Assembly (NCBI GenBank): GCA_002269645.1
Contig: NIVC01003439.1
Location: 1-64,000 of the forward strand
Length of the DNA: 64,000 nt
Direction of reading: 5' to 3'
Source of the DNA: Macrostomum lignano
Lineage: Eukaryota
Shown here: positions 1-61,269 of the stretch, in pieces
Layout of the letters: each line of letters starts with the position of its first letter
How positions within the stretch are numbered: the first letter of the stretch is position 1
Notes under the pieces: model-generated
What the model saw: the letters and a program-made list of their open reading frames with translations, nothing else
The model's database searches: none
Told to the model about the DNA's origin: nothing
Program-made: the position numbers and the translations under genes

Positions 1-1242
1 TGCGTCACGTTGCCGTCCCGAGGCGCAGCATGAACAGCCGCTCAGACCGAAGGACACGGTCGCGATCGTCGGCCTGTCGCCCGAGCTCATCCTCATCGTC
101 CGAGTGCCAGGAATCCGGTCTCCCGGCTCGGTGTAGAAGTTCACCAACACGGAGTTGAACTTCGGGACATCGAACTGGGTATCATGGTAAATGAAGTCAC
201 GAATGTCTTCAATTACCTGATGCCAGTTAGATTTTCCTTCAGCTCAACCCGCTGTAGGTGTACGACGGGCCGATCCAGTAGACGCGGCGCTGCTCACTCG
301 GACGATGCTGAAAGGTTGAGGCAGCAGGTCGGTGATCAGGCGCTCGTAGACTTGGTCCGCGACCTCGCTCTCAGGAACTTGGGCGCATAGATGATGGTGC
401 TGTCGCTGGCGTAGATCGTCTGCTGACAGTCAGTCAAGTCAAGGCTCATCAGGGAAGATGATTTGACTGATGTCAGCGTCCAGTTGCTCGGCAGGGGCTT
501 TGGCAGCGTCGAGGCCTGGTCTGCAGCCGATTGCTGGCGCTCCTCAGACGTCGGCGCTGCCGCTGCCGCACTGAGCTCGCTGGACTCGGCAGTTGGTGGC
601 TCGGTGGTTGCTGCGGCCTCGTTGGATGGCAGGGCGCTTGTCTGGCCTGGCTCGTCGCAGTCGAGAGACATGCGCTGCTCTGCCTCTGCGCCTGCAGCCT
701 CCGGCAGCTGCTCATTCTCTCGCAGGATCTCCTCTGCGTTGCGCAAGAGCTCGCCGGCCGGGGGCTGATCGAGTGGCGGCCGTCCAGACTGCGTCGAGCT
801 CGCATCTGGCCTGCTGGCGGCGGGCTCGCAGTCGATGGCTCAGCTGTCGGCGTCAGTCCAAGAAGCTGGCGACCGTAGGCTTCGTTCGGACGATACCGGT
901 GCTCGAGAGAGGGCCGGCAGTCCATCTTTTTAGCGCTGGCGCGATTCGCAGCCATATGGCGTGATTATTTGGGTGCACTCACACTAAACTAAACTAGACA
1001 ACTACTAATGAGTCAGGAGGCACACAAAGTGCGCTCGCTGAGAGGGGTGGGGCGACTGCAAGATAAGACTAGGGGTGGGGTAGAGATAAAAACAAATGTA
1101 CAGTGGAATGGAAGGCTAACTAAAGTACTTTTAAGAGCTAAGCTAGGCTAGTCTAAACTATTCTATTTCTAATAAGCCTTTCTAGGAAAGGCCTGCAAAA
1201 ACTAGAGAATTCTCCTAAGAGTATCCCTCCACGGAAATCTTT
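1..1242 (-). mobile_element. 5' part of a second copy of the AlkB-carrying LINE (5' UTR plus ORF1 N-terminus and most of the AlkB domain); continues beyond the left window edge
   Basis: 1-~905 is near-identical to 6452-~7362, and ~905-1242 to 8302-8642. ORF1 start MAANRASAKKMDCRPSLEH is at 955. Several single-base indels break the frame (e.g. near 110 and 760). No MITE at the ctc(g/a)agag site. Confidence 0.9.
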
Positions 1243-1879
1243 GTTAAAAACGAGGTGCCGTCGAAACCGGCGCGGGTCAGTTCCGAAGAACTCTGCCGCA
1301 GTTATATTTTGTATTTGATCGAAAGAATTAAAAATATTTACAAGATTTCGATTTGAATATTTAATACGAATATTGAAATAAAAATGTACATATATAAAAC
1401 TATTTTTCAATATTTTGCAGTATTTTGCACGCATTTGGGGATAAAAAAGAGGGGAGGGAAATCCCGCACAAAGAAGGGATCTAATAAAAACAGGACATCT
1501 AAAAAATACGTGCTTGATATTTGAAGGCCTATTGAGAGTAAAAGCAAGACATTTAAGTAAAAAAATAGAGATTAAAATGCAATAGCGCATATTTGAATTT
1601 AGTTGTAAAAATAGAATGAATATAGTAAAGGTGTAAAAAAGCAATTAGTGATATTTGTAGAGCAGTTGGGTAAAAAACACAGTTGGGAAAATTGTAAAAA
1701 GAAACGCGAGGAGACATAGAGATTACCTAATCAGTCCTAATGACTGATCAACCGATCTCTGTCTCAGGCAGCAAGTTTAGTTTTATTAGTTGCGTTTCAG
1801 AGCGTGGTCACTTCCGGTTTGGAAGGCTGGTAGCCAGCCTAACCCTGGGGTGGGATTCCCCTGTTTCTTTCCCGACGCC

Positions 1880-4616
1880 TCATGGCATCCCAGAGGACAT
1901 TGAGGACGGGGTTCGGCCCGGAGCCCGAGGGGCTTCCGGCTCAATGTGGAAGCTGTGGAGCTTGGCTGCCCTCATCTTGAGCAGCCAAGCCACCCCCAGC
2001 TGCTTGACCCTGTCTGCGAGCATCGGCATACCTGCCAGCTTGTGCAGGTATTCAATGCTGATGTAGGATGGCACACCATAGCAGATACGGAGAGCCAGGT
2101 TTTGAATTTTCTGCAATTTGATTTGGTTAGTCGCACAGATTTGGCTCAGGATTGGCGCTCCGTAGGTGAGAGCGCTTTCTCCGTATGCCCTGTACAGCAT
2201 TCTGAGGGTGGTGCTACTCAGCTTAGTCATTTTTGCAATTCTGCACAGTGACATTACAATGGCTCTGCTGGTATCTGCCATGTTGTCCACATGTTTGTTC
2301 AGGCAGAGGCTCTGGTCAAGGAGGACACCCAGGAATTTCACCTCCTGACAGTACGGAACCTCAGTGTCCCCCAGATACAGTTTGGGTCGCAAGTCCATGC
2401 GCCTAGTGGGTTTGTAGTTGAAAGCGATTGCTTTGCTTTTACCGGCATTCAGTCTAATGCCTTGTTTACCGCACCAGTCAAAGACTCGTCTGAGGTAGCT
2501 TTGAAGGGATGTTCGGAGCCCCGCAAAGGTGTCTGCTGAGGCCCAGACGGCCATGTCGTCTGCGAATTGACTGCGTTTGACGCTTGAGATGGTGGGAGTC
2601 GGCATTGAGCTGACGAAGAGGAGGTACAGGAGAGGGCTCAGAATGCCTCCCTGAGGGACGCCAGCCTGGATGGTGTGGGGATCGCTTAGGGCCCCCTCGA
2701 TTCGAACCTGGATCTGTCTGTCTCGCAGGTAGTCAGACAGGATTCGCATGAGCATAGGTGGAAAACCATCGGTGAGCATGCTATGCCTGATCTTGTCGTG
2801 CCAGGTGGAGTCAAAAGCTGCCTCTGCATCCAGGAAGACTGCAGCGGACTTTTTAGCTTTGCACTTTGCTACCATGACATCTTGTGCCAGACGGCAGAGG
2901 TTGTCATACGTGGAGTGAATTTTGCGGTAGGCGCATTGGTCATCTCCTAGGGTCTTATTATCCTCAAGGTGCTTGGTGAGTCTTTTTGCTATAAGCTTCT
3001 CAAACACTTTGCCCAGACATGAGGTCAGGCTGATTGGTCTGTAGGAGTTGGGGTGTTCGGGCGGTTTGTCCGGCTTGGGGATCATTGTCACCACAGCTTT
3101 CTTCCAGGCGCTGGGGAAAATCCCTCGACCGTAGCAGGCGTTGAAGAGGTTAGTGAGTCTCGTGATTGCCACCCCCTCTAAGCCCAGCTTGAGGACGCAG
3201 TTGGGAATCTTGTCCAGCCCGGGTGCTCCATCAGGCCTGAGGTGCTCCAGTTCCCACACTGTGTCTGCCACAGAGAATGCAGCATCAAGTGGGTGGGTCT
3301 CGATGGGTTCGATTCCCTCAGGAACGGGGTAGAATGAGGTGAGCTGTGCCACATCGGCCACCTCACGTTTGAGCTGTTCGCATGTGGAAGGGACTGGGCG
3401 CATCTTTGAGTCCAGAGTCTCGGCTAGAAGGTTAGCCTTCTCCAGATCTGTGTGCGCAGTTGTTTGACCCAGGGTGAGGCTGGGGATGGAGGTTGGCTTA
3501 AATTTGCCCATCAGCTTTTTAGTGTCATGCCAGAAATTCTTCACTTTCTTGTTCTTGCTGTTTTCAACAATACTCTCACAGACTTTGGTGAGCTTTCCAT
3601 TCTGGAAGGAGTTAATTTCTCTCTTTATGCGATTTGCGAGCTGGTTTGCTTGGGTTTTGAAATTTTGATCCCGTGTGCTGAAGAAGAGGCGTCTGAGTCG
3701 TCTGCGCTCTTTGATCAGGTCGAGGATGTACTTGGGTAGGGCGTTTTTGGCACCACAGTCTGGTACTGTGGAGTCAATCACGGTGTGAATGGCCTTTGTG
3801 ATGTGATCCACTTCGGCATTGATTTGGTCAGCATTTGATAACTGAATATTCTGATCTGAGCTCAAAGCTTCACTGATTTTGAGTCTGAACTCGTCCCAGT
3901 TTGTTTTTGAGAAGTTTTTGGGTCTGGGGGACCAGCCCATTTCTTCGACTGAATATTGAGCGTGAGGATTATAGGTAAGTGGTCACTGCCCAGGTCAGGA
4001 CCCACCTCAAAGTCCTGCACAAATGGGAGAAAGTCCTCAGTGGCCAGGGCGAGGTCCAAGACATTCCTAGAAATCAGCCCGTTTTTGGTGGCCAGTCTGG
4101 TGAACTGACCGGCTTGATTGAGAATGGTGGGCGAGGTGGGGCCCTCAGACAGCCAGTCGTGCAGCTGGTAGCCAGCCATGTTGTTGCTGCTGTCACCCCG
4201 AGGAAGCGGTGTCTGGCATTGAGGTCACCCATGAGCACACTGCGCCTACGGGAGAGAAGATTTTTGAGTAGGTTCAGGTTCAGATGATACGGTGCTGGAG
4301 ACCTGTACACCAGAGCAAGATTGAAGTCAGGACCAGAGTTGTCAGACAGGCTCACGGTGCAAGAGATGGCTTCATGGTTGACATTGTCATACTGCAAGCG
4401 CACATTTGTGAGTTTGACGCGAGGAGAGTGGGCAAGGAGAAGCCCGCGTTTGACTTGCGGGGTATCATACCGAATGATGGAGTACCCGGGAATCTGGACA
4501 GTGTGACAACTTTTGAGAATAGTCTCAGAGAAGAGGGCAATGTCTAGCTCCTGACTGACGACCCACTGTGTCAGCTCTCTGATTTTCGGGTTGAATCCCC
4601 TGCAGTTTAAATGCAT
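1880..4616 (-). CDS. LINE ORF2: AP endonuclease plus reverse transcriptase, split over three frames (4616-~4200, ~4200-~3940, 3940-1880)
   Basis: APE motifs LKIMHLNCRG, LFSET, MGDLNARH, LDL, GSDHLPI. RT motifs YRPISLTSCLGKVFE, FLDAEAAFDS, GVPQGGILSPLLY, FADD, KFLGVLLD. Both frameshifts fall in short homopolymers. Confidence 0.92.
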
Positions 4617-4702
4617 AATCTTCAGGGCTGTGGTTTGATTGTTTGAGTCTACAGTTAACGCACTGAAGTTTCAATTCAAGTCTTGAGTTTAGCTGCCTGA
4701 GA

Positions 4703-7700
4703 CTAGGACTCAGTGGTCGCGCCGGCCATGCCCGGCACTTCCTGGAGTGCAGCCCGCACAATGTCCTCAACCATTTTACTGGTTGATTCCACAGTGAGGA
4801 CCTCCCCAGGCGGTCGGGACAGGGCCTGCACAACCACTTGAGTCAGAGAGCGGGTGATCAGGGGCAACAGCATGCTCACCACCGACATAAAGTCACTAAG
4901 CTGCAGCTGCACCGCCTGGCCGGCATCAGCTGACGGAGCAGTCGCATTGACATCAGACTCGGTCTCTGCCGCCGGAGCGCTCCTGGCATCATCGGTCACG
5001 ATGACAAGCGGCCGGATCGCGGCGGGTACCGGCACCGTGCGCCTGCCTCGGCGGATCAGCCAGCCGCTGTCGGAGTCGTCGTCGGCGGCGGCGTCGTCGG
5101 TCTCACTTGACACTGGGGCAGCAGCGGCCGCAGCTTCCGCAGCTCGCGCCGCGGCTTTGGCCTCAGCAGCCGCTCTGGTCGCCTTGTCGTGCTCCGCCTT
5201 GGCGACGGTGCAGGCTCGACTGGTGGTTCGGTGCGAGCCGCCGCAGTTGGCGCAGACCGCTGGGCCCTCGTGCTGGCACTCCTTCCAGGAATGCTGGCCG
5301 CCGCAAATCCGGCAGCGCTGCTGCCCCCGACACTGAGCAGCGCGGTGGCCGAACTCCTGGCAGCGCTGGCATTGCAGAGCGCGGACCGGCTCGTCTGTGC
5401 GGCTGTCCTCGCAGTTGAACTTCAAGAAGTCGGTGCAGATGCCATCGCGGAGGCACTTCTCGTAGGTCATCGCCGACTTTGTGAAGATGCGCACGAACTG
5501 GGTTGCCTTTCCAGTCGCTCTGGCTCGGATTCTGTGGACGCTGACAATGTCCAGCTTGAGCGTGCCGCGCAACAGGGTCGCGAAGTCAGCCTCCGAGAAT
5601 GCGAGGGGCACCTCAGTAGCGACGAAGGTGCGTACCGGCTGCTGCTGCACTCTGTCGGGCCCTGTTCTGTTGTCCAGCGGTCGGGCTCGGGCTGGACGGC
5701 GCTTTACGGGATGCTCGAGCAGCTTCTCCTCGCGCAGCGCGCCGCCCAGGAAGACGTTGTAGTCCCGCTCCGACGCTGGGAACACGAGATAGGCCGGCTG
5801 ATTCGCCATCGGCGCAGTGTTGACGGCTCTAGCTTCGCCGGCAAAGTTGGTCTGCAGCCAGGCAACGAACTGCATCAGCTTGTTGGCCGCGTCCCGGTGC
5901 ACCTCAAAAACGATCGGCGGGATGGCAGCCTGGGGCCTTCTGGGCGGCGCAGGGCGCGCCGCAACCTGCGCGTAGGGCCGCGCTGCCGCAGCCGCCTGCG
6001 CGCTTGTCGCCGAAGCCGCCGCCGCACCGGCCGGCCATGAAGCCGCCGAAGCCGCCGCCGCACCGGACGCCGCGCCGCGACCTCCTCGCCTGCCTCGCTG
6101 GTGGCCGCCACGGCCGCGCCGACCCCGATCGCTTTCGCGGTCTCGCGTCGCCGTCGCCTGCCGCTCCTGGGGCCTGTCGTCGCCCCGGCCGCCCTGGTCG
6201 TCGTCGTGGCCGCCTTGGTCGTCGTCCCGACCGCCTTGGTCGTCGCCGAATGGGCCGCCGTTGAGCGGCTGGCTGTAGGTCGGATCATCCGGCAGAGCTC
6301 GCTTGCGCCGCAGCTCCGGCTTGGTGACACGGAATGTTAGCGAGATGCGGACGCCATTCTGAGAGTGGGCGGCGGGCACCTGGTGCTGCAGGCGTTTCTG
6401 GCAGTTTCCTGCCATCAGAATCAGCGAGCCTGGCAGCGTTGGAAAGCGGTGCGTCACGTTGCCGTCCCGACGGCGCAGCATGAACAGCCGCTCAGCGCCG
6501 AAGGACACGGTCGCGATCGTCGGCCTGTCGCCGAGCTCATCCTCATCGTCCGAGTGCCAGGGAATCCGGTCTCCCGGCTCGGTGTAGAAGTTCACCAACA
6601 CGGAGTTGAACTTCGGGACATCGAACTGGGTATCATGGTAAATGAAGTCACGAATGTCTTCAATTACCTGATGCCAGTTTAGATTTTCCTTCAGCTCAAC
6701 CCCGCTGTAGGTGTACGACGGGCCGATCCAGTAGACGCGGCGCTGCTCACTCGGACGATGCTGAAAGGCTTGAGGCAGCAGGTCGGTGATCAGACGCTCG
6801 TAGACTTGGTCCGCGACCTCGCTCAGGAACTTGGGCGCATAGATGATGGTGCTGTCGCTAGCGTAGATCGTCTGCTGACAGTCAGTCAAGTCAGGCTCAT
6901 CAGGGAAGATGATTTGACTGATGTCAGCGTCCAGTTGCTCGGCAGGGGGCTTTGGCAGCGTCGAGGCCTGGTCTGCAGCCGATTGCTGGCGCTCCTCAGA
7001 CGTCGGCGCTGCCGCTGCCGCACTGAGCTCGCTGGACTCGGCAGTTGGTGGCTCGGTGGTTGCTGCGGCCTCGTTGGATGGCAGGGCGCTTGTCTGGCCT
7101 GGCTCGTCGCAGTCGAGAGACATGCGCTGCTCTGCCTCTGCGCCTGCAGCCTCCGGCAGCTGCTCATTCTCTCGCAGGATCTCCTCTGCGTTGCGCAAGA
7201 GCTCGCCGGCCGGTGGGCTGATCGAGTGGCGGCCTTCCAGACTGCGTCGAGCTCGCATCAGGCCTGCTGGCGGCGGGCTCGCAGTCGATGGCTCAGCTGT
7301 CGGCGTCAGTCCAAGAAGCTGGCGACCGTAGGCTTCGTTCGGACGATACCGGTGCTCAAGAGTAGGGATTCCAATCCCGGGATCCCGGGATCCCGGGATC
7401 CCGGGATTGGGGCCAAAAATCCGGGATTTGAATCCCGGGATTTTTTTGGGAATCGAATCCCGGGATTTTTAATCCCGGGATTGCAAAAGACCGGGATCGG
7501 GATCCCGGGATTTCAAGGCCTTAATCCCGGGATTGGTCCGGGATTAGAACGACCTTTCAATGCCTAAATTAGATAATTTAAAGTCTAAACGTTTATTTGA
7601 ATAATAAAACATTTATTTGTTTTTGCTGTTTCTCAATGAAACGTTAAACATTTGCAAAGCTCCTGTCCTAATTGAGCTAAAAATTGTTAATGTGAACTGT

Positions 7701-8355
7701 AAATTATAGATAATTTTAACTTTTTTTCGTTTTCTACCACGAGACGAGACTGAGGGCCTTTTCATATTGCTTGCTCTGGTTCCAGAACAAGAACCAATTT
7801 GTGAAGTATAACTTTTTGTCTCCATAACTAGAGGGAGATACGTGCTATAAAGTTTTTATTATTGAATGACAGTCGCCAAGAAGAAAGTGAAAAATTGTGC
7901 TAAGTGAGGCTGTTAAGGCAGTCAAATATTAACAGAGTTTAATAGTTATACTGCTGTTTTTCTTGGAATTCCGAACCGATTCTGGTTCTGGAATTGGTAA
8001 TATGAAAAGGCCCTGAGACTCTGAGAGTCGCGAGACCATGACTACTGCACGCGGCACGCCGCACAGTCCGTCTAGCAATTTAGGGATTCCAATCCCGGGA
8101 TCCCGGGATCCCGGGATTGGGGCCAAAAATCCGGGATTTGAATCCCGGGATTTTTTTGGGAATCGAATCCCGGGATTTTTAATCCCGGGATTGCAAAAGC
8201 ACCGGGATTCCGGGATTTTGAATCCCGGGATTTCAACAGCATCGGGATTTCGGGACTATTCAATCCCGGGATTGTAAAATGTCGGGATTTTGGAATCCCT
8301 ACTCAAGAGAGGGCCGGCAGTCCATCTTTTTAGCGCTGGCGCGATTTGCAGCCAT
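4703..8355 (-). CDS. LINE ORF1 (~900 aa): acidic/low-complexity N-terminus, AlkB dioxygenase, RG-rich linker, RRM-like region, three CCHC knuckles; N-terminal ~17 codons (8355-8302) cut off by a MITE
   Basis: The 851-aa ORF 4703-7258 stays open upstream to the insertion. Knuckles CQRCQEFGHRAAQC, CRICGGQHSWKEC and CANCGGSHRTTSRAC. The uninterrupted N-terminus is seen in the other copy at 955. Confidence 0.88.
6325..6745 (-). other. AlkB-family 2OG-Fe(II) dioxygenase domain (ALKBH2/3- or viral-AlkB-like) inside LINE ORF1
   Basis: YTYSG...FNSVLVNFY...IPWHSDDE (HxD, 6548-6556)...IATVSFGAERLF...GSLILM...LQHQVP (distal His 6383-6385)...RISLTFR (RxxxxxR, 6329-6349). All Fe and 2OG ligands are present. 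Confidence 0.93.
7363..8301. mobile_element. Non-autonomous hAT (Ac-like) element / MITE
   Basis: TIRs TAGGGATTCCAA...TTGGAATCCCTA. 8-bp TSD CTCAAGAG at 7355-7362 and 8302-8309. Many CGGGAT/ATCCCG subterminal repeats. Second internal left end at 8081. Empty site in the sister copy near 902. Confidence 0.9.
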
Positions 8356-9123
8356 ATGGCGTGATTATTTGGGTGCACTCACACTAAACTAAACTAGACA
8401 ACTACTAATGAGACAGGAGGCACACAAAGTGCGCTCGCTGAGAGGGGTGGGGCGACTGCAAGATAAGACTAGGGGTGGGGTAGAGATAAAAACAAATGTA
8501 CAGTGGAATGGAAGGCTAACTAAAGTACTTTTAAGAGCTAAGCTAGGCTAGTCTAAACTATTCTATTTCTAATAAGCCTTTCTAGGAAAGGCCTGCAAAA
8601 ACTAGAGAATTCTCCTAAGAGTATCCCTCCACGGAAATCTTTAGTAAAAGGCGAAAGATTTAATCGTGGAATGAAGAGAAACCAGAGCTGAGGATTGTAG
8701 GCGGCATAGCTTAGATTATATAGAAATATTTTCTACAACCTGAATGAAACCTTCGTTTTCGTAAAGCAATTATTAAAAAAACAGCATTGAAGATTTTAAA
8801 GGCAGTGTTTAACAATATCTCCGAACAATTAATGTGACTAATTCAACTTTAAGTTAAATGTTTCACTGGCTCGTAATACAACACACGATTTCCAAATATT
8901 TTTTACAGATTCTTAAGCTAGTTTTATGATTAAGAGGTTTTTGTATTCTAACTTGCATGCTAATTTCCGTGACATTCCATGCTGATTTCCGTGCATGCTA
9001 AATCTCTCTACTGACTTAAGTGGCATTATTTGTGCACGAAAGCCAGTTTTAGTCTAGGCACATAAATATTTTTTCTATGCTGTAAAAAGTGGGAAGGGTA
9101 GGCAGGAAAATTTCGGTGGGTCG

Positions 9124-10060
9124 GCATCATACGCCCGAAAAATCACAACTCCGAAAACATTTCCCATCATAAACCCGAAATATCACAAGCCCGATATATC
9201 ATAACTCCGAAAAACAAAATAGCAACGCCCATCATAAACCCGAAATATCAATAACTCCGAAAGTTCTAGCAATGTCCATCACTATTTTGGTTTTCGGAGT
9301 TATGGTAATTCGGGTTTATGATATTTCGGGTTTGTGATATTTCGGGTTTGTGATATTTCTGGTTTGTGACATTTCGGGTTTGTGATATTTTGGGTTCGTG
9401 ATATTTCTGGTTTGTGACATTTCGGGTTTGTGATATTTCGAGTTTGTGATATTTCTGGTTTGTGATATTTCGGGCTTGTGATATTTCTGGTTTGTGACAT
9501 TTCGGGTTTGTGATATTTCGGGTTTGTGATATTTCGGGTTTGTGATATTTCGGGTTTGTGACATTTCGGGTTTGTGATATTTCGGGTTTGTGACATTTCG
9601 GGTTTGTGATATTTCTGGTTTGTGACACTCGGGTTTGTGATATTTCGGGTTTGTGATATTTCGGGTTTGTGATATTTCGGGTTTGTGATATTTCGGGTTT
9701 GTGATATATCGGGTTTATGACATTTCGGGTTTGTGATATTTCGGGTTTGTGACATTTCGGGTTTGTGATATTTCTGGTTTGTGACATTTCGGGTTTGTGA
9801 TATTTCGGGTTTGTGATATTTCGGGTTTGTGATATTTCGGGTTTGTGATATTTCGGGTTTGTGATATTTCGGGTTTGTGATATATCGGGTTTGTGATATT
9901 TCGGGTTTGTGACATTTCGGGTTTGTGATATTTCGGGTTTGTGATATTTCGGGTTTGTGATATTTCTGGTTTGTGACATTTCGGGTTTGTGATATTTCGG
10001 ATTTGTGATATTTCGGGTTTGTGATATTTCGGGTTTGTGATATTTCGGGTTTGTGATGTC
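9124..10060. repeat. Foldback-like element built from a 16-bp unit (TTTCGGGTTTGTGATA); short left arm is inverted relative to the expanded right arm
   Basis: Left arm CCCGAAATATCACAA-type units (9130-9262), ~40-bp centre flanked by ATAACTCCGAAA / TTTCGGAGTTAT, right arm of ~45 tandem units. Confidence 0.65.
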
Positions 10061-10669
10061 CCCCAGTACCTAGTTTTATTTAAAGCCAGCCAGATTCTAC
10101 AATATATTTGACAAAACATTGCTTAGGTGAACTACAGTGTGCAGTGAGGTGACTGCCGAGTTTTCAGGAACCGCCTGTCAGCAAGACAGGCTAACGTTGG
10201 GCGCCCCCACCCAGTTAATAATTAGGAGTTATTACGCAATACTTTAGTGGTGTTTGAACAGTGTCATGGAATTACATGGTGTATGCCAATACCCTATAAT
10301 GACATATCTTAGCTATACGTGTATAATATAGGCCATACTTAACTATTGTTCCAGCATAGATTGGCTCAATCGCTTTCTTATATCAATCCAGCTCTTGCCT
10401 CGTTAACTGGTTCCGATTGTCATCATTACAATCAATCTATTGTCAACAATGGTCAGAGAAAACTTATTAGTCGCCTAACTTATTAAAATTAATTCTTGTA
10501 GTTTCAAGATCTTACGCTTGAGCTGTTGAATTTTAGAAATGTTAATGATTTCTCAAATTATTAGAAATTGTTACTAAGGCGAGTAAGGAGTAGAACAGGT
10601 TGATAAATTCGACTTGGTTGCGCTAAGGGTTGTCTCAGTTCAGCTAATGACGAATCTCTGAGGAAGCCA

Positions 10670-10741
10670 AGACAGACAGAATTGCAGAGAGACAGAATTG
10701 CAGACAGTCAGACAGAATTGCAGGCAGACAGACAGAATTGC

Positions 10742-10774
<33 letters not shown>

Positions 10775-11755
10775 GTCAGACAGTCAGACAGAATTGCAGA
10801 CAGACAGACAGAATTGCAGACAGACAGAGAATTACAGACAGACAGAATTGCAGACAGAGAATTGCATACAGACAAAATTGCAGACAGACAGACAGAATTT
10901 CAGACAGACAGAATCGCAGACAGAAGCAGACAGGCGGCACAGAAGCAGACAGGCGGCACAGAAGCAGACAGGAGGCACACAAGCAGACAGGCGGCACAGA
11001 AGCAGACAGGAGGCACAGAAGCAGACAGGAGGCACACAAGCAGACAGGCGGCACAGAAGCAGACAGGAGGCACACAAGCAGACAGGAGGCACACAAGCAG
11101 ACAGGAGGCACACAAGCAGACAGGCGGCACAGAAGCAGACAGGAGGCACACAAGCAGACAGGAGGCACACAAGCAGACAGGCGGCACAGAAGCAGACAGG
11201 CGGCACAGAAGCAGACAGGCGGCACAGAAGCAGACAGGAGGCACAGAAGCAGACAGGAGGCACAGAAGCAGACAGGCGGCACAGAAGCAGACAGGAGGCA
11301 CACAAGCAGACAGGCGGCACAGAAGCAGACAGGAGGCACACAAGCAGACAGGAGGCACACAAGCAGACAGGCGGCACAGAAGCAGACAGGCGGCACAGAA
11401 GCAGACAGGCGGCACAGAAGCAGACAGGAGGCACAGAAGCAGACAGGAGGCACAGAAGCAGACAGGCGGCACAGAAGCAGACAGGAGGCACACAAGCAGA
11501 CAGGCGGCACAGAAGCAGACAGGAGGCACACAAGCAGACAGGAGGCACACAAGCAGACAGGCGGCACAGAAGCAGACAGGCGGCACAGAAGCAGACAGGA
11601 GGCACAGAAGCAGACAGGAGGCACAGAAGCAGACAGGCGGCACAGAAGCAGACAGGAGGCACACAAGCAGACAGGCGGCACAGAAGCAGACAGGAGGCAC
11701 ACAAGCAGACAGGAGGCACAGAAGCAGACAGGCGGCACACAAGCAGACAGGCGGC
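10670..11755. repeat. (CAGA)n-derived repeat grading into a 19-bp minisatellite AGAAGCAGACAGGCGGCAC
   Basis: Direct inspection; all six long ORFs here are repeat artefacts. Confidence 0.95.
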
Positions 11756-12281
11756 AGGACTGCACCGCAGCGCAGGGGAAATCCAAGCCGCAATCCGCTC
11801 ACGCACGGCAAAGCTGATTCGGCTTCAGCAGAGGTAGTCCGTTTCCATCCAGCTATCAAAGCCAGGCACAAATGAAGCTCGTTGGTGCATAATGAGCTGA
11901 GCTCGGCTCAAAGCAGGCGGCCAATTCCCATGGGGGATTTTTCTCCCCAAAATACGCTCGTACATATTTAGCATGCAGGACCTATGGGATAATTCTATTC
12001 CGGTCTTCGCCCGCGCCTTCCCCACTTGATTTGGCCCCTTCTCCCCTCTCTAAAAGCCAAATATTGCGCAGGAGGAAGCTTAAGCGGGGCGGGGCGGAGG
12101 GGAGGGCCGGAGGCAAAATATAGGTCTTTGTTCCCCCCCGAAAATCCCTCGCGCCCAACCCGATCCTTGCAAACCCTCCGCCGCCACAGCTTGCCAATTT
12201 TCCCTTTCGATCCCGTTTGGCCCTCGTTTACTCCTCAACTATTTTTAATCATTTGGCCGCTTCGCTGTTTCACTGGGTATG

Positions 12282-12972: not shown

Positions 12973-13336
12973 CACCACGATTTTATTATTTTTTTTAATA
13001 TCAAATATCACCTATCTAATATTTTTTCGCTTAATTTCTTTTCTTCCTGCTATGTAGTCCCTGTTATATGGGTGCGTATGAGTCAATGGAGGAGCTTGGA
13101 CTGTCTCATGTCTGCGAGATGAAGCATAGAGGTTATTAAAAGTATATTGAGGTCATGTCAGCATATTGGTTTTCCCAAGAGCTGAATTCGATGCTTCATA
13201 GGGATGGGAAATTTAAACTGTTGGCTACAAATAGAATTACTATTTATTAATTCTCAAATCAAATATTCCTACCTGGTCCATGAGTTTTGGCGGAATGTCT
13301 CCAGTTTCTTGATTGCCCCTGCCAGATCTCAACATA

Positions 13337-15205
13337 GGCACCCCTGTCGCCTATCTAGCACCCCTGTCGCCTATCTAGTACCCCTGTCGCCTATCTAGCA
13401 CCCCTGTCGCCTATCTAGCACTCCTGTCGCCTATCTAGCACTCCTGTCGCCTATCTAGCACCCCTGTCGCCAATCTAGCACCCCTGTCGCCTATCTAGCA
13501 CACCTGTCGCCTATCTAGCACACCTGTCGCCTATCTAGCACTCCTGTCGCCTATCTAGCACCCCTGTCGCCTATCTAGCACCCCTGTCGCCTATCTAGCA
13601 CCCCTGTCAGCTATCTAGCACCCCCTGTCGCCTATCTAGCACCCCTGTCGCCTATCTAGCACACCTGTCGCCTATCTAGCAATCCTGTCGCCTATCTAGC
13701 ACTCCTGTCGCCTATCTAGCACCCCTGTCGCCTATCTAGCACACCTGTCGCCTATCTAGCACTCCTGTCGCCTATCTAGCACCCCTGTCGCCAATCTAGC
13801 ACCCCTGTCGCCTATCTAGCACACCTGTCGCCTATCTAGCACACCTGTCGCCTATCTAGCACTCCTGTCGCCTATCTAGCACCCCTGTCGCCTATCTAGC
13901 ACCCCTGTCGCCTATCTAGCACCCCTGTCAGCTATCTAGCACCCCCTGTCGCCTATCTAGCACCCCTGTCGCCTATCTAGCACCCCTGTCGCCTATCTAG
14001 CACTCCTGTCGCCTATCTAGCACTCCTGTCGCCTATCTAGCACCCCTGTCGCCAATCTAGCACCCCTGTCGCCTATCTAGCACACCTGTCGCCTATCTAG
14101 CACACCTGTCGCCTATCTAGCACTCCTGTCGCCTATCTAGCACCCCTGTCGCCTATCTAGCACCCCTGTCGCCTATCTAGCACCCCTGTCAGCTATCTAG
14201 CACCCCCTGTCGCCTATCTAGCACCCCTGTCGCCTATCTAGCACACCTGTCGCCTATCTAGCAATCCTGTCGCCTATCTAGCACTCCTGTCGCCTATCTA
14301 GCACCCCTGTCGCCTATCTAGCACACCTGTCGCCTATCTAGCACTCCTGTCGCCTATCTAGCACCCCTGTCGCCAATCTAGCACCCCTGTCGCCTATCTA
14401 GCACACCTGTCGCCTATCTAGCACACCTGTCGCCTATCTAGCACTCCTGTCGCCTATCTAGCACCCCTGTCGCCTATCTAGCACCCCTGTCGCCTATCTA
14501 GCACCCCTGTCAGCTATCTAGCACCCCCTGTCGCCTATCTAGCACCCCTGTCGCCTATCTAGCACACCTGTCGCCTATCTAGCAATCCTGTCGCCTATCT
14601 AGCACTCCTGTCGCCTATCTAGCACCCCTGTCGCCTATCTAGCACCCCTGTCAGCTATCTAGCACCCCCTGTCGCCTATCTAGCACCCCTGTCGCCTATC
14701 TAGCACCCCTGTCACCTATCTAGCACCCTTGTCACCTATCTAGCACCCTTGTCACCTATCTAGCACCCTTGTCACCTATCTAGCACCCTTGTCACCTATC
14801 TAGCACCCTTGTCACCTATCTAGCACCCTTGTCACCTATCTAGCACCCCTGTCACCTATCTAGCACCCCTGGCGACGTTTTCAATCCAGCTGGGTCTAAC
14901 GTCAGATTTAGAGCGCTACTGTCACCCCATCTAGCGCAACTGTCACCCCATCTAGCACCCCTGTCAGTTATCTAGCACCCTTGTCACCTATCTAGCACCC
15001 CTGGCGACGTTTTCAATCCAGCTGGGTTTAACGTCAGATTTAGAGCGCTACTGTCACCCCATCTAGCGCTACTGTCACCCCATCTAGCGCAACTGTCACC
15101 CCATCTAGTGCTACAGTCACCCCATCTAGCGCTACTGTCACCCCATCTAGTGCTGCAGTCACCCCATCTAGCGCTACTGTCACCCCATCTAGCGCTACTG
15201 TCACC
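13337..15205. repeat. 20-bp minisatellite CTATCTAGCACCCCTGTCGC with higher-order structure, followed by a related 21-bp array
   Basis: Tandem units; diagnostic variants recur 582 bp apart. Confidence 0.95.
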
Positions 15206-15959
15206 CCTTCCAATGACAATGTCATCCCTAAGGCTACTAACTGTGATCTGAGCTCACCCAGCAGTCGCACATGAAAATGGCAAGAAACTTTATAAAACCG
15301 GACTGCCCACATACTACTTAGCGGAGCGGAATCCACTCGAGGAAAAATATAATATTGACTGCCTTCCCCCAGCTGTATGTGTCTGTGCCCCCTGTATGCG
15401 CCCGAATTTCTCGATGGGCTCTGCTGTGCATGCAAGGCTGGCTTAGTGGGGAAGGCGGGCTAAGCGGGATGGGGAGTAGGCTCTGTAGTGGGGGAGTTTC
15501 AGTATACCTAACCTACCCCACTCCTCCCCTCTCCCCCCGAGGGGATTACGCGACTGCATTCCCCAAATCCCAATTTCCCCAAAAGCTGCGGAGGCGAGCG
15601 CTGAGTCATCTCTTGCAGTGCGGGGAGCGGCTGTATAGAACGAACGGTTCGGGAGAAAAATCGAGGAGATTGACGGGAGATTTCGGATTATTATAGACTT
15701 TGACTGCATCGACTAAAATAAGTATAGACTCTAAAAGATTCTCAAAGCCCTCCAAATCCCAAGTTTTACATACACCACATACCATTGCTTATAATATATG
15801 AAACATTTCTCGATAAATTTCGCCCCTTTCGCCGCCCCTGCGGTTTTGCGCAGGGAGATCCGGTGGTGCCGGCGTCCGCAGCGCGGTTCCCCTCCGGAGA
15901 GTCCAGGAGGTGGATGGTCGCTCACCCGGTAGCCCTTCTGTAGCGGACGAGCTGGCAAA

Positions 15960-20149: not shown

Positions 20150-20480
20150 CCTTCACCCTATGGCAGCCAGGGCTCGAAGGTCGCACAGTGCGGCAGGATC
20201 AGCGGACGCCGCTCGTTAGCTCTGGGCCCTGTGCCCTTCCGTGTCCAGATGCCGGTGAAGGCGAAGTCCGCCAGACTGTGGCCACCGATGGTGGAGTGTC
20301 GCGGGCGTGCCGAATGTCGCCGAAGTGCGCCAGCATGCGACCGCGGATGCTGTTGGGGGTCTCGCCGACGTAGACGGTCTCGCGGTCGCACCAGCGGCAG
20401 AACACGGCATTGACGGCGTTCGTGGCGTTAAAGTCGATTCTTTGGCTGATGAATATCTGGACGGTGGTGGCTGCCGAACT
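20150..20480 (-). pseudogene. Penelope-like element GIY-YIG endonuclease remnant
   Basis: NAVNAVFCRWCDRETVYVGETPNSIRGRMLAHFGDIR, then after a frameshift GHSLADFAFTGI...ERR.LI...TFEP. This fits the CxxC-containing PLE GIY-YIG pattern. Confidence 0.7.
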
Positions 20481-20504
20481 GGGACTGCAGACAGTGTTGA
20501 ATTG

Positions 20505-20827
20505 CACAATTCACAGTGCTATTTAGAGTCTCAGGGACTGATTCACAATTCAAGTGCTATTTAGAGTTGAAGTGACTGATTCACAATTCACAGTGCTATT
20601 TAGAGTTGAAGTGACTGATTCACAATTCACAGTGCTATTTAGAGTTGAAGTGACTGATTCACAATTCACAGTGCTATTTAGAGTTGAAGTGACTGATTCA
20701 CAATTCACAGTGCTATTTAGAGTTGAAGTGACTGATTCACAATTCACAGTGCTATTTAGAGTCTCAGGGACTGATTCACAATTCACAGTGCTATTTAGAG
20801 TCTCAGAGACTGATTCACAATTCACAG
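20505..20827. repeat. 39-bp minisatellite, left part (TTCACAGTGCTATTTAGAGTTGAAGTGACTGATTCACAA)
   Basis: The same array resumes at 29331 after the LTR element. Confidence 0.95.
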
Positions 20828-21663
20828 TGTCATGAATGTGTTATGACAATGTGCTCTTTGCTTAGTTGCTGCACCGGGCCAGTGGGCCGTCCTCTCCCCC
20901 TCCCCCCTCCTTAGATATTTTCTGACTCACTCACCTGCACTTCTGCGCGTGCGTACCCCTCCCCTCCCTGCCTAGACCTTTTCTGTTGAGTCAACCCCCC
21001 ATGCTCTGCGTGCGACCCCCCCCCCCTGTGCGACCCCGCCCCATTATTTTGTTAGCTTTGCTGCCCCGCCCCTGTTTGTGATTGGCTGCCAGTCCCAGTC
21101 TGCCGTGCTGCGCCCCGGCGATTGGCTGGTACAGCTCATGCGTTGCCTTGGCTGATGTCTAAGCCCCCTTTTCTGCCTTTATCCCGCGCCCTCGACCCCC
21201 AGTTTGCTGCCTATTTATTCGGCCCCCTTGAGACCCCATTCTCGTCGTCTTCGTGGCTCCTCGGCGATTGTGCCAGCGTTGGTTGCTGAATTGCTATTCC
21301 TCGCAGAATTGCTAGACAAATATATAAGTAAAGAATATCGAGATCACCACTGCTCTGACGGCGCTGTTTCTTGTACGACTGAAATCGCGGCTGGTAAGCC
21401 TTCCAATTTGTACGTCATTTGGGTCTGCATCTGTACTAGGCACCTTAGAGGGATTAAGTGCGTCGTACGCCGGTCCCACCCCAAGCAGCTCTGCGTCGTA
21501 CGCGAGTCTGTAGGCTGTCGTGCGTCGTACGCTCGAGCAGCCTAGTCCCGACGGACACCGCGTCGTACGCGTGTCAGTGGAGGACCGCAGCCAGGGTCAG
21601 TACACGAACCCGGGTCTGGGAAAGGGGCACGAAAGGACCGAGCCCTTGAGCCCCATCATCACA
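20828..21663 (+). repeat. 5' LTR
   Basis: TGTCATGAAT...CATCATCACA; TATATAA at 21321; candidate splice donor CTG|GTAAGC at 21393/21394. Confidence 0.96.
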
Positions 21664-21771: not shown

Positions 21772-22851
21772 ATGGATGCTGGAGGTGCTGCTGGAGGTGC
21801 TGCTGGAGGTGCGGCTGGAGGTGCGGCTGGAGGTGCGGCTGGAGGTGCGGCTGGAGGTGCTGCTGGAGGTGCTGCTGGAGCCTTTGGTGTTAATGATCTG
21901 GTCGCCGCCTTGACTGCCCAGATTCAGCAGAACATGCAGCAAGCGGGTGCCTTCAGGATTCAGAGGCCGGTGAAGTATGCTCCAGGAATGAATTTCGTGA
22001 AGTGGTTGAGGCTCTTCGTAGCTTATTGCGATGCCATGCAGATTCCGATGCAGAATCGGCGCGCTCAGTTGCTCAGCAATCTAGACTTCAGCACATTCCA
22101 AGTTGTCGACAACATGAACCTTGATGACGACCTGCAGTTCGAAGAATTTACCCAGGCCTTGAGGGATAGGTTCACTATGCACCGTACCGTCGTCGACTAC
22201 CGCACAGAACTGAGCAATAGAGAGCAGAGCGAGAAGGAGTCGGTAGAAGATTTCTCTGAAGCTGTGATTGAGTTGGTCGCAAACGCCTTTCCTGATGCGC
22301 CTGCCGATGTGCGCGATGATCTTGCGAAAGAGCGATTTATGCGAGGCGTCCGTGCGGGGGTGGCTGTGCGGGAGCGATTGTACATGAGCCAGCCGGAGAC
22401 CTTAGCAGACGCGATGCGTCTAGTGCATCAGCTGGAAGCGGCGGTTAGGGCAAGTCACGGTCCACCAGGTCAGGGATCAAAAAGAGCTACCGTCTGTGCT
22501 GTCACAGCTGAGACTAGAAATGAGGCTTCCGAAAGCAGTGAGGTCGAGATGCTTCGAATACAGCTTGCGGCCATGGAGATGCGAATGAAAGAGATGGAGG
22601 AGCGGAGGTCTGGAGAAGCGGAAGAGCCGACCCCGGCGAGTCGGAAGGCTGTGCAGTGTTTTTCGTGTCGAGAGTGGGGCCATATCTCATCAAAGTGTCC
22701 CAAGAAAACCAGCCAGACAAGTGGAAACGGGAAATCGCCAGTACGATGTCACAAGTGCAACGGTGAAGGCCACCTATCCTTCAAGTGTCCGAAGTCGGGA
22801 AACGGGCCGAGGGGACCGACCGGGGAGAGTCGGGACCCTGCCAGGAAGTGA
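21772..22851 (+). CDS. gag: Gag (359 aa) with N-terminal (GGAA)n repeat and two CCHC knuckles
   Basis: CFSCREWGHISSKC and CHKCNGEGHLSFKC; retrotransposon capsid-like core (WLRLFVAYC...LxQxEKESVEDF). Confidence 0.93.
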   Translation: MDAGGAAGGAAGGAAGGAAGGAAGGAAGGAAGGAAGAFGVNDLVAALTAQIQQNMQQAGAFRIQRPVKYAPGMNFVKWLRLFVAYCDAMQIPMQNRRAQLLSNLDFSTFQVVDNMNLDDDLQFEEFTQALRDRFTMHRTVVDYRTELSNREQSEKESVEDFSEAVIELVANAFPDAPADVRDDLAKERFMRGVRAGVAVRERLYMSQPETLADAMRLVHQLEAAVRASHGPPGQGSKRATVCAVTAETRNEASESSEVEMLRIQLAAMEMRMKEMEERRSGEAEEPTPASRKAVQCFSCREWGHISSKCPKKTSQTSGNGKSPVRCHKCNGEGHLSFKCPKSGNGPRGPTGESRDPARK

Positions 22852-26994: not shown

Positions 26995-27093
26995 AGAAGG
27001 GTCCGGTGTACGGCGCTTGGATAGCCAAGGGGGAAGGGAGGTACATGTCGTGCGTGTCTCATTGCTCATCGGAGTTAGGCCGGACTGTTACAG

Positions 27094-28496: not shown

Positions 28497-29330
28497 TGTC
28501 ATGAATGTGTTATGACAATGTGCTCTTTGCTTAGTTGCTGCACCGGGCCAGTGGGCCGTCCTCTCCCCCTCCCCCCTCCTTAGATATTTTCTGACTCACT
28601 CACCTGCACTTCTGCGCGTGCGTACCCCTCCCCTCCCTGCCTAGACCTTTTCTGTTGAGTCAACCCCCCATGCTCTGCGTGCGACCCCCCCCCTGTGCGA
28701 CCCCGCCCCATTATTTTGTTAGCTTTGCTGCCCCGCCCCTGTTTGTGATTGGCTGCCAGTCCCAGTCTGCCGTGCTGCGCCCCGGCGATTGGCTGGTACA
28801 GCTCATGCGTTGCCTTGGCTGATGTCTAAGCCCCCTTTTCTGCCTTTATCCCGCGCCCTCGACCCCCAGTTTGCTGCCTATTTATTCGGCCCCCTTGAGA
28901 CCCCATTCTCGTCGTCTTCGTGGCTCCTCGGCGATTGTGCCAGCGTTGGTTGCTGAATTGCTATTCCTCGCAGAATTGCTAGACAAATATATAAGTAAAG
29001 AATATCGAGATCACCACTGCTCTGACGGCGCTGTTTCTTGTACGACTGAAATCGCGGCTGGTAAGCCTTCCAATTTGTACGTCATTTGGGTCTGCATCTG
29101 TACTAGGCACCTTAGAGGGATTAAGTGCGTCGTACGCCGGTCCCACCCCAAGCAGCTCTGCGTCGTACGCGAGTCTGTAGGCTGTCGTGCGTCGTACGCT
29201 CGAGCAGCCTAGTCCCGACGGACACCGCGTCGTACGCGTGTCAGTGGAGGACCGCAGCCAGGGTCAGTACACGAACCCGGGTCTGGGAAAGGGGCACGAA
29301 AGGACCGAGCCCTTGAGCCCCATCATCACA
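28497..29330 (+). repeat. 3' LTR
   Basis: By eye it matches the 5' LTR except for a C-run (11 vs 9 C). Confidence 0.96.
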
Positions 29331-61171: not shown

Positions 61172-61190
61172 TTAGTTGGAATTTGCTGGC

Positions 61191-61215
61191 GGAAAGGCAG
61201 CAGAATTTGAAGAGG
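61191..61215 (-). promoter_or_regulatory. Candidate TCT / 5'-TOP initiator(s) of RPS6
   Basis: CCTTTCC (61191-61197) and CCTCTTC (61209-61215) on the minus strand, 20-44 nt upstream of the ATG; both match YCTYTYY. Confidence 0.5.
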
Positions 61216-61269
61216 ATCTTGTAGTAATAAAAATTTTCCAAACACCGACTCATTCTCAAAAAATCTTCA

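What the first reader, a model, noticed from the sequence alone, without database searches (positions are those of the whole stretch)
6325..6745. LINE whose ORF1 carries a catalytically complete AlkB dioxygenase
Seen: an AlkB domain with HxD...H iron ligands and RxxxxxR, in frame within ORF1 and upstream of the RRM-like/3xCCHC gag region. It is also present in the neighbouring copy (1-~290), so it belongs to the element. Established: AlkB/ALKBH2/3 enzymes oxidatively demethylate m1A and m3C in single-stranded DNA/RNA; compact AlkB domains occur in replicases of several plant RNA viruses; ORF1p coats LINE RNA in many copies. I am not aware of this in Jockey/I-type ORF1s. Inference: the RNP carries its own RNA/cDNA repair or demethylase activity, removing RT-blocking lesions or host-deposited marks during TPRT.
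Basis: partly seen in the sequence, partly recalled or inferred. Interest (0 to 1): 0.86.

Follow-up and report, generated by a model that had tools for sequence, protein, structure and literature searches.

The report
Flatworm LINE with AlkB demethylase ORF1
A jumping gene (LINE) of the flatworm Macrostomum lignano, like its relatives in other data sets, carries a complete, evolutionarily conserved AlkB-type nucleic-acid demethylase fused to its RNA-binding protein, which suggests that the element repairs or de-marks its own RNA or cDNA, something I could not find described for LINEs.

Summary
Window 6325-6745 on the minus strand encodes residues 172-311 of an intact 851-aa ORF1 (7258..4703). 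This stretch matches Pfam 2OG-FeII_Oxy_2 (E=2e-21) and human ALKBH3 (E=4.5e-24). The Fe(II) and 2-oxoglutarate ligands are all present: H235, D237, H292, R304, R310, N223 and Y225.

ORF1 reads: disordered N-terminus, AlkB, disordered linker, two RRMs, three CCHC knuckles. An APE+RT ORF2 follows. The host is Macrostomum lignano.

That copy is the next unit of a head-to-tail tandem array of 6.45-kb units that are 99% identical.

- The same AlkB-RRM-CCHC ORF1 with an APE+RT ORF2 occurs in diverged relatives. These include other M. lignano subfamilies and contigs from several sequencing runs of unknown organism.
- The ORF2s of these elements are 37-59% identical to each other and only 24-31% identical to the next LINEs.
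- AlkB is the best-conserved part of ORF1 (61-66% identity against 30-41% in the linkers; pN 0.22-0.30 against pS 0.63-0.82).
- Every ligand is invariant.

Catalytic activity and substrate are inferred. The most likely role is removal of m1A/m3C, which block reverse transcriptase, from the element's RNA or cDNA. I found no prior description.

The parts
8314..8649 (-). Start of the 6.45-kb repeated unit, probably the 5' UTR and 5' end of the element. It adjoins position 7367 in the uninterrupted units.
   Evidence: Window 902-1249 matches 8302-8649 at 98.6%. The NIVC assembly joins this stretch directly to the ORF1 region. The array's homology ends at 8649.
7368..8301 (.). 934-bp secondary insertion in the 5' region of this copy. 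It is not part of the LINE. It has terminal direct repeats of about 150 bp rich in ATCCCGGGAT, and a 12-bp target duplication.
   Evidence: Absent from the same locus in assembly GCA_002269645.1. Positions 7356-7367 and 8302-8313 both match 902-913. Internal repeat 7363-7516 against 8081-8236.
4703..7258 (-). ORF1, 851 aa, intact. Order of parts: disordered N-terminus, AlkB, disordered R/G/A-rich linker, RRM, RRM, 3xCCHC, helix, disordered stretch, C-terminal helices.
   Evidence: pLDDT 80-92 in the three folded blocks.
6314..6886 (-). AlkB (ALKBH3/2-like Fe(II)/2OG dioxygenase) domain, aa about 125-315. Ligands: H235/D237 (6556-6548), H292 (6385-6383), R304 (6349-6347), R310 (6331-6329), N223/Y225.
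   Evidence: Pfam E=2e-21. PDB ALKBH3 E=4.5e-24. Foldseek ALKBH3 TM 0.74-0.81, ALKBH2 0.72-0.78, ALKBH5 0.52-0.61. Invariant columns. Motif coordinates.
5927..6313 (-). Disordered linker, aa 316-444, with DDQGG repeats and R/G-rich and A-rich stretches.
   Evidence: pLDDT below 50. This is the least conserved part of ORF1, 30-41% identity between relatives.
5399..5926 (-). Two RRM-like domains, aa 445-524 and 541-620.
   Evidence: Beta-alpha-beta-beta-alpha-beta topology twice, pLDDT 90-97. All top Foldseek matches are tandem-RRM proteins such as Pub1, nucleolin, HuR and U2AF65, E=3e-7 to 2e-5.
5210..5371 (-). Three CCHC zinc knuckles: CX2CX4HX4C, CX2CX3HX4C, CX2CX3HX6C (aa 630-683).
   Evidence: Direct reading of the sequence. 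The Cys and His columns are nearly invariant in 14 relatives. Pfam zf-CCHC is weak, E=0.0075.
1842..4616 (-). ORF2 (APE + RT, no RNase H). In this window it is broken by three frameshifts, near 4197, 3940 and 1920. The same unit in the other assembly is intact at 926 aa.
   Evidence: Pfam Exo_endo_phos and RVT_1. Intact ORF2 at L001:12792-15572. tblastn frame map.
1250..1841 (-). 3' region of the unit, a T-rich, AT-rich probable 3' UTR. The exact 3' end of the LINE was not determined. No poly(A) at the junction with the next unit.
   Evidence: Sequence. Tandem junction.
1..1249 (-). Next unit of the tandem array: 5' region, start of ORF1 and about 75% of the AlkB domain including WHSDDE. It runs off the window. 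The frame is broken by many 1-bp indels.

Best explanation
SHOWN. The locus is one unit of a young tandem array of an APE-type LINE of Macrostomum lignano. Its ORF1 protein is a fusion of an ALKBH3/2-like Fe(II)/2-oxoglutarate dioxygenase domain to a type I LINE ORF1 (two RRMs plus three CCHC knuckles).

The fusion is an ancestral, selectively maintained feature of a distinct LINE lineage. That lineage includes several diverged M. lignano subfamilies and elements in at least nine other sequencing runs.

INFERRED. The domain is an active oxidative demethylase. Because ORF1p binds the element's own RNA in cis, the enzyme is tethered in many copies to the LINE RNP. There it removes N1-methyladenine and N3-methylcytosine from the single-stranded RNA template, and possibly from the exposed single-stranded target DNA or cDNA. 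These are the canonical ALKBH3/AlkB substrates, and they are hard stops for reverse transcriptases. Their removal would let target-primed reverse transcription copy the 6-kb template in full.

This is the same logic as the AlkB domains in plant flexivirus replicases.
For: Domain identity: Pfam E=2e-21. PDB ALKBH3 E=4.5e-24, better than ALKBH2 at 2e-15. AF2 model pLDDT 80-92 with Foldseek TM 0.74-0.81 to ALKBH3-ssDNA complexes, against 0.52-0.61 for the m6A eraser ALKBH5.

Full ligand set: N218, N223, Y225, H235, D237, D238, E239, H292, R304 and R310 are invariant in all 9 full-length retroelement-borne sequences.

Same architecture elsewhere:
- L005 is a complete element, with ORF1 P0163 carrying AlkB and gag, then an APE+RT ORF2.
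- L007 holds P0164 and the start of an ORF2.
- L002 holds an ORF1 with AlkB and 3xCCHC, plus an ORF2 56% identical to this one.
- P0162 and P0165 each occur in 3-4 runs.
- M. lignano subfamilies: P0311, P0167, P0168, P0169, P0166, P0170 and P0173.

Distinct LINE clade: the ORF2s are 37-59% identical to each other and 24-31% identical to the next LINEs.

Selection: AlkB identity 0.61-0.66, linker 0.30-0.41, gag 0.50-0.65. pN 0.22-0.30 against saturated pS 0.63-0.82, so dN/dS is at most about 0.12-0.27.

Retroelement-borne AlkBs are each other's best matches in reciprocal phmmer searches.

Established knowledge:
- AlkB and ALKBH3 demethylate m1A and m3C in single-stranded DNA and RNA.
- Viral AlkB domains repair RNA (abstract of PMC2553587, seen; PMC544882).
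- An orchid Ty3/Gypsy AlkB protein has m6A RNA-demethylase activity in vitro (PMC9289625).
- From my own knowledge, m1A and m3C block RT, which is why AlkB treatment is used in tRNA sequencing.
Against: There is no biochemical or expression evidence, so activity, substrate and cis-action are all inferred.

No single assembled unit has both ORFs intact. Window ORF2 has three frameshifts, and NIVC unit A has a split ORF1. The excess of 1-bp indels over substitutions suggests assembly error.

This particular subfamily was seen only as one tandem array, so recent transposition of it is not shown. Target-site duplications and the 3' end were not defined.

Bootstrap support for one clade of all retroelement AlkBs is weak. 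It was recovered in 16% of replicates, and not at all under another distance and taxon set.

The organisms behind the Logan and ENA contigs are unknown.
Confidence: 0.6

Rival explanations
1. Epitranscriptomic counter-defence. The domain erases a regulatory host mark such as m6A, or regulatory m1A, from LINE RNA. It would change the RNA's stability, translation, nuclear retention or silencing rather than repair damage.
For: m6A levels affect L1 retrotransposition, and ALKBH5 suppresses L1 (abstract of PMC7873242). The only other retrotransposon-borne AlkB with in vitro demethylase activity that I found, in an orchid Ty3/Gypsy element, is an m6A demethylase (PMC9289625).
Against: Sequence and fold are clearly ALKBH3/2-like, not ALKBH5-like (88 and 60 bits to ALKBH3 and ALKBH2; TM 0.74-0.81 against 0.52-0.61 for ALKBH5). 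D238, which aligns with the Asp right after the HxD motif in ALKBH3 and the bacterial AlkBs, is kept. From memory of E. coli AlkB, this residue (D135) is linked to m1A/m3C recognition.
Confidence: 0.17
2. Domesticated or host-serving gene array. The tandem array is a host locus that exploits a LINE-derived AlkB-RRM protein, for example for RNA repair in stem cells, and is no longer a mobile element.
For: This subfamily is seen only as at least 3 head-to-tail units at 99.3-99.7% identity. No assembled unit has both ORFs intact.
Against: ORF2 (APE+RT) is retained next to ORF1 in every unit, and is intact in one. Several diverged subfamilies keep the ORF1+ORF2 pairing, which is expected of active LINEs. 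The disruptions are mostly 1-bp indels that differ between assemblies.
Confidence: 0.08
3. Non-catalytic module. The AlkB fold serves only as an extra single-stranded nucleic-acid-binding or chaperone surface of ORF1p.
For: AlkB proteins bind single-stranded nucleic acids. ORF1p function is mainly RNA binding and chaperoning.
Against: Every Fe(II) and 2OG ligand is invariant over lineages that share only 35-40% identity in the domain. Pseudo-enzymes usually lose such residues.
Confidence: 0.05
4. Local accident. A one-off capture of a host ALKBH exon, or an assembly chimera, confined to this locus.
Against: Two independent assemblies agree. The same fusion occurs in relatives whose ORF2 is only 37-59% identical, and in other M. 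lignano subfamilies.
Confidence: 0.02

Closest known systems
Human ALKBH3 (and ALKBH2), bacterial AlkB
   Same: Double-stranded beta-helix dioxygenase fold. HxD...H iron triad, RxxxxxR and N/Y 2OG ligands, and the Asp after HxD. 33-34% identity and TM 0.74-0.81 to ALKBH3. About 40-49% identity over the core to marine bacterial AlkBs and to M. lignano's own ALKBH3-like genes.
   Different: It is embedded in a transposon ORF1 between disordered linkers. It lacks the insertion that ALKBH3 has after the beta-strand following the SFG...R motif. The donor lineage is not resolved.
Type I LINE ORF1 proteins (RRM + CCHC; Jockey, I, R1, Tad1 and others; Khazina & Weichenrieder classes as summarised in PMC4120745)
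   Same: Tandem RRM folds followed by three CCHC knuckles with Jockey/I-like spacing. ORF1 lies upstream of an APE+RT ORF2.
   Different: It has an N-terminal enzymatic AlkB domain. A term search of the text of a survey of 448 Jockey-superfamily ORF1s found no mention of AlkB, dioxygenase or 2OG. Its ORF2 is only 24-31% identical to the nearest other LINEs retrieved.
AlkB domains in replicase polyproteins of plant RNA viruses (Flexiviridae and others)
   Same: A compact AlkB domain recruited by a selfish RNA-templated replicator. It was shown to repair methyl lesions in RNA (abstract of PMC2553587, seen; PMC544882).
   Different: There it is fused to a viral replicase, not to an RNA-coating protein of a retrotransposon. 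The hosts are plants. I did not compare the sequences directly.
Orchid (Phalaenopsis) Ty3/Gypsy elements with an AlkB ORF (PMC9289625)
   Same: A retrotransposon-encoded AlkB-family demethylase, with activity shown in vitro.
   Different: It is an LTR element, the AlkB is in a separate extra ORF, it is ALKBH5/9B-like (an m6A eraser), and it was acquired recently in one plant genus. Here the element is a LINE, the domain is fused inside ORF1, it is ALKBH3-like, and it has been conserved through deep divergence.
Esterase (SGNH) domain of CR1/L2 ORF1p (PMC3905857)
   Same: Precedent for an accessory enzymatic domain inside a LINE ORF1 protein.
   Different: The enzyme class and presumed substrate (lipids) are unrelated.

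Membership tests
AlkB / ALKBH2-3 subfamily of Fe(II)/2OG dioxygenases | Significant match to the family profile (Pfam PF13532) above the curated cutoff | tested here: met
   77.5 bits against a cutoff of 31.2, E=2e-21. Relatives score 73-109 bits.
AlkB / ALKBH2-3 subfamily of Fe(II)/2OG dioxygenases | HxD...H iron triad and RxxxxxR plus N/Y 2-oxoglutarate ligands | tested here: met
   H235, D237, H292, R304, R310, N223 and Y225 are present and invariant in all full-length retroelement copies.
AlkB / ALKBH2-3 subfamily of Fe(II)/2OG dioxygenases | Double-stranded beta-helix fold closest to ALKBH3/2 rather than ALKBH5 or FTO | tested here: met
   Foldseek gives ALKBH3 TM 0.74-0.81, ALKBH2 0.72-0.78, ALKBH6 about 0.6, ALKBH5 0.52-0.61 and EcAlkB 0.65-0.68. 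FTO does not appear among the 50 matches listed.
AlkB / ALKBH2-3 subfamily of Fe(II)/2OG dioxygenases | Oxidative demethylation of m1A/m3C in single-stranded DNA or RNA | not testable with these tools
   Needs an enzyme assay.
APE-type non-LTR retrotransposon (LINE) | ORF2 with an N-terminal APE endonuclease and an RT | tested here: met
   Exo_endo_phos(_2) and RVT_1. Intact 926-aa ORF2 in the other assembly.
APE-type non-LTR retrotransposon (LINE) | ORF1 RNA-binding protein upstream of ORF2 (type I: RRM + CCHC) | tested here: met
   Tandem RRM fold and 3 CCHC knuckles. There is an 86-bp spacer (4702..4617) between the ORF1 stop codon and the ORF2 start.
APE-type non-LTR retrotransposon (LINE) | Dispersed copies with target-site duplications, 5' truncations and a defined 3' tail | tested here: inconclusive
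   This subfamily was seen only as a tandem array of at least 3 units. No tail at the unit junction. Several diverged subfamilies exist in the M. lignano proteome, but their genomic contexts were not available.
Jockey clade / Jockey-I group | RT groups with Jockey-clade references in a phylogeny | not tested
   No reference LINE library (Repbase, RTclass1) was available. The only named hits are weak. P0155, named 'transposon X-element', covers 40% of the query at 32% identity.
Jockey clade / Jockey-I group | ORF1 with three CCHC knuckles, and an ORF2 of about 900 aa without RNase H | tested here: met
   Gag-region relatives carry Pfam PRE_C2HC (P0172).

The most novel reading that the evidence does not exclude
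An ALKBH3-like demethylase is the ancestral, catalytically active hallmark of a previously unrecognised LINE clade that spans several animal hosts. The same AlkB type has also been recruited by a Penelope-like retroelement (L008). On this reading, self-encoded removal of RT-blocking or regulatory RNA methylation would be a recurrent retroelement strategy, parallel to that of plant RNA viruses. It would also reveal methyl lesions or marks as a natural barrier to retrotransposition.
Probability: 0.4. Interest if true: 0.85.

Novelty: new variant of a known kind. Interest (0 to 1): 0.75.

Why it matters
LINE ORF1 proteins are regarded as RNA-binding chaperones. The only enzymatic accessory domain in a LINE ORF1 that I know of is the esterase of CR1/L2.

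A conserved nucleic-acid demethylase tethered to the LINE RNP would be the first case of a LINE carrying its own RNA or cDNA repair or de-marking activity. It would imply that base methylation (m1A, m3C, or a host mark) limits reverse transcription in vivo.

It also provides a natural, mutable system to test this. M. lignano is transgenic-tractable (PMC5730564).

Finally, it is a second, independent example, after plant viruses and one orchid LTR element, of selfish RNA-templated replicators recruiting AlkB.

Tried and rejected
1. A whole-ORF1 word-indexed homology search returned nothing. Low-complexity A/R/G/Q stretches probably saturated the candidate list. Domain-only and HMMER full scans worked.

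2. I first read the neighbouring copy as an independent insertion with a different 5' flank. I rejected this. The difference comes from a 934-bp secondary insertion, and the copies are units of a tandem array.

3. A bacterial (marine gammaproteobacterial) donor was suggested. I rejected it as a conclusion. The exhaustive search finds metazoan ALKBH3 and M. lignano's own ALKBH3-like paralogues at equal similarity, so the donor is unresolved.

4. An NJ tree gave one retroelement AlkB cluster, but bootstrap and an alternative distance did not support it. I rely instead on reciprocal best-match ranking, the shared architecture and the ORF2 clade.

5. dN/dS: dS is saturated in all informative pairs, so I give only upper bounds and pN against pS.

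6. Literature searches for an AlkB-bearing LINE found none. Papers that mention both AlkB and Repbase concern host ALKBH genes. The M. lignano TE paper does not mention it.

7. Searching papers for the run accessions to identify the organisms found nothing.

9. Contig-end overlap checks for circular or tandem collapse in the Logan contigs were uninformative.
Full report
**Observation.**
The feature lies on the minus strand. ORF1 runs 7258..4703, is 851 aa long and has no stop. Pfam 2OG-FeII_Oxy_2 matches aa 172-310 at E=2.1e-21, 77.5 bits against a cutoff of 31.2. That is exactly window 6745..6325.

Against PDB sequences the best hits are human ALKBH3 (2iuw, 8jnr, 9ncz; E about 5e-24), then ALKBH2 (about 2e-15).
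- NSVLVNFY at 6607-6584
- WHSDDE (H235-x-D237) at 6559-6542
- LQHQVP (H292) at 6391-6374
- RISLTFR (R304, R310) at 6349-6329

By fold and alignment the complete domain is aa about 125-315, window 6886..6314.

**Architecture of ORF1p.**
I ran an AlphaFold2 model using an alignment of nine family members. It gives three confident blocks:
- AlkB, aa 135-314, pLDDT 80-92
- two beta-alpha-beta-beta-alpha-beta domains, aa 445-524 and 541-620

Disordered stretches separate them: aa 1-134, and aa 315-444, which is R/G- and A-rich.

Foldseek places the first block with ALKBH3-ssDNA complexes (TM 0.74-0.81) and ALKBH2 (0.72-0.78). These are well above ALKBH5 (0.52-0.61) and E. coli AlkB (0.65-0.68).

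A separate model of aa 441-720 has mean pLDDT 86. Its 50 best listed matches are almost all tandem-RRM proteins. Three CCHC knuckles follow at 5371-5210.

So ORF1p is a type I LINE ORF1 (RRM + CCHC) with an N-terminal AlkB module.

**ORF2 and host.**
ORF2 starts at 4616, after an 86-bp spacer (4702..4617) following the ORF1 stop codon. It encodes APE + RT. In the window it has three frameshifts.

The AlkB query hit M. lignano protein BOX15_Mlig027759g7 at 100% identity. Its contig, NIVC01002892.1 in GCA_002269645.1 (locus L001), is the same locus. In that assembly the ORF2 of the same unit is intact: 926 aa, with no RNase H.

**The neighbouring copy is a tandem duplicate.**
Window 1-913 matches 6450-7367 at 98%, and window 902-1249 matches 8302-8649. 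The apparent difference in 5' flanks comes from a 934-bp insertion (7368-8301). That insertion has a 12-bp target duplication and is absent from the NIVC assembly.

Extending the NIVC contig (L009) shows at least three head-to-tail units of 6451-6464 bp at 99.3-99.7% identity. The neighbour is therefore not independent evidence that the domain belongs to the element.

In the window the neighbour encodes the same residues, including WHSDDE. It does so through at least 8 frame switches (12 one- or two-base indels against 6 substitutions). The second His and the RxxxxxR motif are off the window.

Across four units from two assemblies, indel events are about as frequent as substitutions, or more so. 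ORF1 is intact only in the window unit, and ORF2 only in NIVC unit A. This pattern looks like long-read assembly error, but real decay cannot be excluded.

**Independent evidence that AlkB is part of the LINE.**
1. An exhaustive HMMER scan with whole ORF1 found proteins that match both the AlkB and the gag regions: P0162, P0163, P0164, P0165 and P0167/P0311.
   - Pfam and local phmmer confirm AlkB plus gag in each.
   - Their contigs show the same gene order. L005 is a complete 9-kb element with ORF1 (843 aa) and an APE+RT ORF2 (948 aa).
   - L007 has ORF1 directly followed by an ORF2.
   - P0162 and P0165 each recur identically in 3-4 runs.
2. The three closest ORF2 relatives are 46-59% identical to this one. 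One of them, L002, has enough upstream sequence to show an ORF1 with the AlkB C-terminal half (HSDDE, QHAVP, RISLTFR) and 3xCCHC.
3. M. lignano itself has further diverged subfamilies. P0311, P0167, P0168 and P0169 are 36-38% identical. P0166 and P0170 are gene models that begin in the last AlkB strand and continue into gag. P0173 is a fragment at 58% identity.
4. ORF2s of AlkB-bearing elements are 37-59% identical to each other and only 24-31% identical to the next LINEs retrieved. ORF1 and ORF2 therefore co-diverged as one lineage.

**Selection.**
In three informative pairs the AlkB domain is the most conserved part of ORF1:

| Region | aa identity |
|---|---|
| AlkB | 0.61-0.66 |
| gag | 0.50-0.65 |
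| linker | 0.30-0.41 |

pN is 0.22-0.30 against a saturated pS of 0.63-0.82, so dN/dS is at most about 0.12-0.27.

Ten residues are invariant in all nine full-length retroelement sequences: N218, N223, Y225, H235, D237, D238, E239, H292, R304 and R310.

**Origin.**
The nearest non-element AlkBs are all about 40-49% identical over the core. They include:
- marine bacterial AlkBs
- metazoan ALKBH3 (emu, Tubulanus, Antedon)
- M. lignano's own ALKBH3-like genes (P0179/P0318, P0268/P0317, P0178)

The element-borne domains are each other's best matches in reciprocal searches, and they cluster in one NJ tree. Bootstrap support is poor. A single ancient capture is the most parsimonious reading, given the shared architecture and the ORF2 clade. 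The donor is unresolved.

**Mechanism (inferred).**
ALKBH3 and AlkB enzymes oxidatively remove m1A and m3C from single-stranded DNA and RNA. Viral AlkB domains do this on RNA (abstract of PMC2553587, seen; PMC544882). From general knowledge, these lesions block reverse transcriptases.

ORF1p coats its own RNA, so a fused AlkB would sit in many copies on the template. It could clear such blocks before or during target-primed reverse transcription.

An m6A-eraser role is the main rival. It has a precedent in the orchid Ty3/Gypsy AlkB (PMC9289625) and in m6A effects on L1 (PMC7873242). It fits less well with the ALKBH3-type sequence and fold.

**Novelty.**
Full-text searches found no LINE with an AlkB domain. 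A term search of the text of a survey of 448 Jockey-superfamily ORF1s found no mention of AlkB, dioxygenase or 2OG. Repbase and Dfam could not be queried, so prior cataloguing cannot be excluded.

I rate it a new variant of a known kind: a LINE with a new, conserved enzymatic ORF1 module.

**Limits.**
- The organisms of the Logan and ENA contigs are unknown.
- The LINE clade was not placed against references.
- Termini and target-site duplications were not defined.
- Activity is untested.

Noticed in passing
L008 (Logan SRR19430222) 2120-5158 and 5266-7398: A 1012-aa protein with a complete AlkB domain (P0313) lies upstream of an ORF with weak RVT_1 and GIY-YIG matches, the domain pair of Penelope-like elements. 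In the BLOSUM62 NJ tree this AlkB sits in the same cluster as the LINE-borne ones. This may be a second retroelement class carrying the same domain.
   Followed up: partly
window 1-8649 and L009 2524-21209: The LINE is arranged as a head-to-tail tandem array of at least 3 units of 6.45 kb at 99.3-99.7% identity. There is no poly(A) or simple-repeat tail at the junctions. The origin is unclear: unequal crossing-over, or end-to-end insertion.
   Followed up: partly
window 7368-8301: A 934-bp insertion in the LINE 5' region. It has terminal direct repeats of about 150 bp made of ATCCCGGGAT-like units, and a 12-bp target duplication. It is absent from the GCA_002269645.1 assembly of the same locus, so it is a polymorphic or recent small element.
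   Followed up: partly
window 21772-28080 (+), with 39-bp repeat blocks at 20434-20967 and 29214-30371: A Ty3/Gypsy-type LTR retrotransposon, with gag carrying PNMA/zf-CCHC and pol carrying PR-RT-RNaseH-INT. It is followed by a 328-aa ORF with DnaJ (E=5e-16) and chromodomain (E=1e-12) matches. This may be an unusual extra ORF of the element.
   Followed up: no
L005 4346-4717; also L006, L015, L016: A conserved 123-124-aa ORF with no Pfam match sits between ORF1 and ORF2 in the AT-rich AlkB-LINE subfamilies (P0163/P0165). The M. lignano element has no such ORF.
   Followed up: no
window 9180-10120, 10680-11880, 13240-15230, 36070-39380, 61140-62900: Long arrays of 16-, 19-, 20-, 37- and 39-bp tandem repeats fill much of the window. 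They create long spurious ORFs in all frames.
   Followed up: no
window 31759-33003 (+) and 42417-44690 (-): Another RVT_1-containing ORF of 414 aa, and a 757-aa ORF with no Pfam match. Neither was examined further.
   Followed up: no
window 1-913 against 6450-7367; units in L009: Differences between the near-identical units are dominated by 1-bp indels (12 indels against 6 substitutions in 920 bp). This suggests residual long-read assembly errors, so frameshifts in this region should not be read as pseudogenisation without read-level checks.
   Followed up: partly
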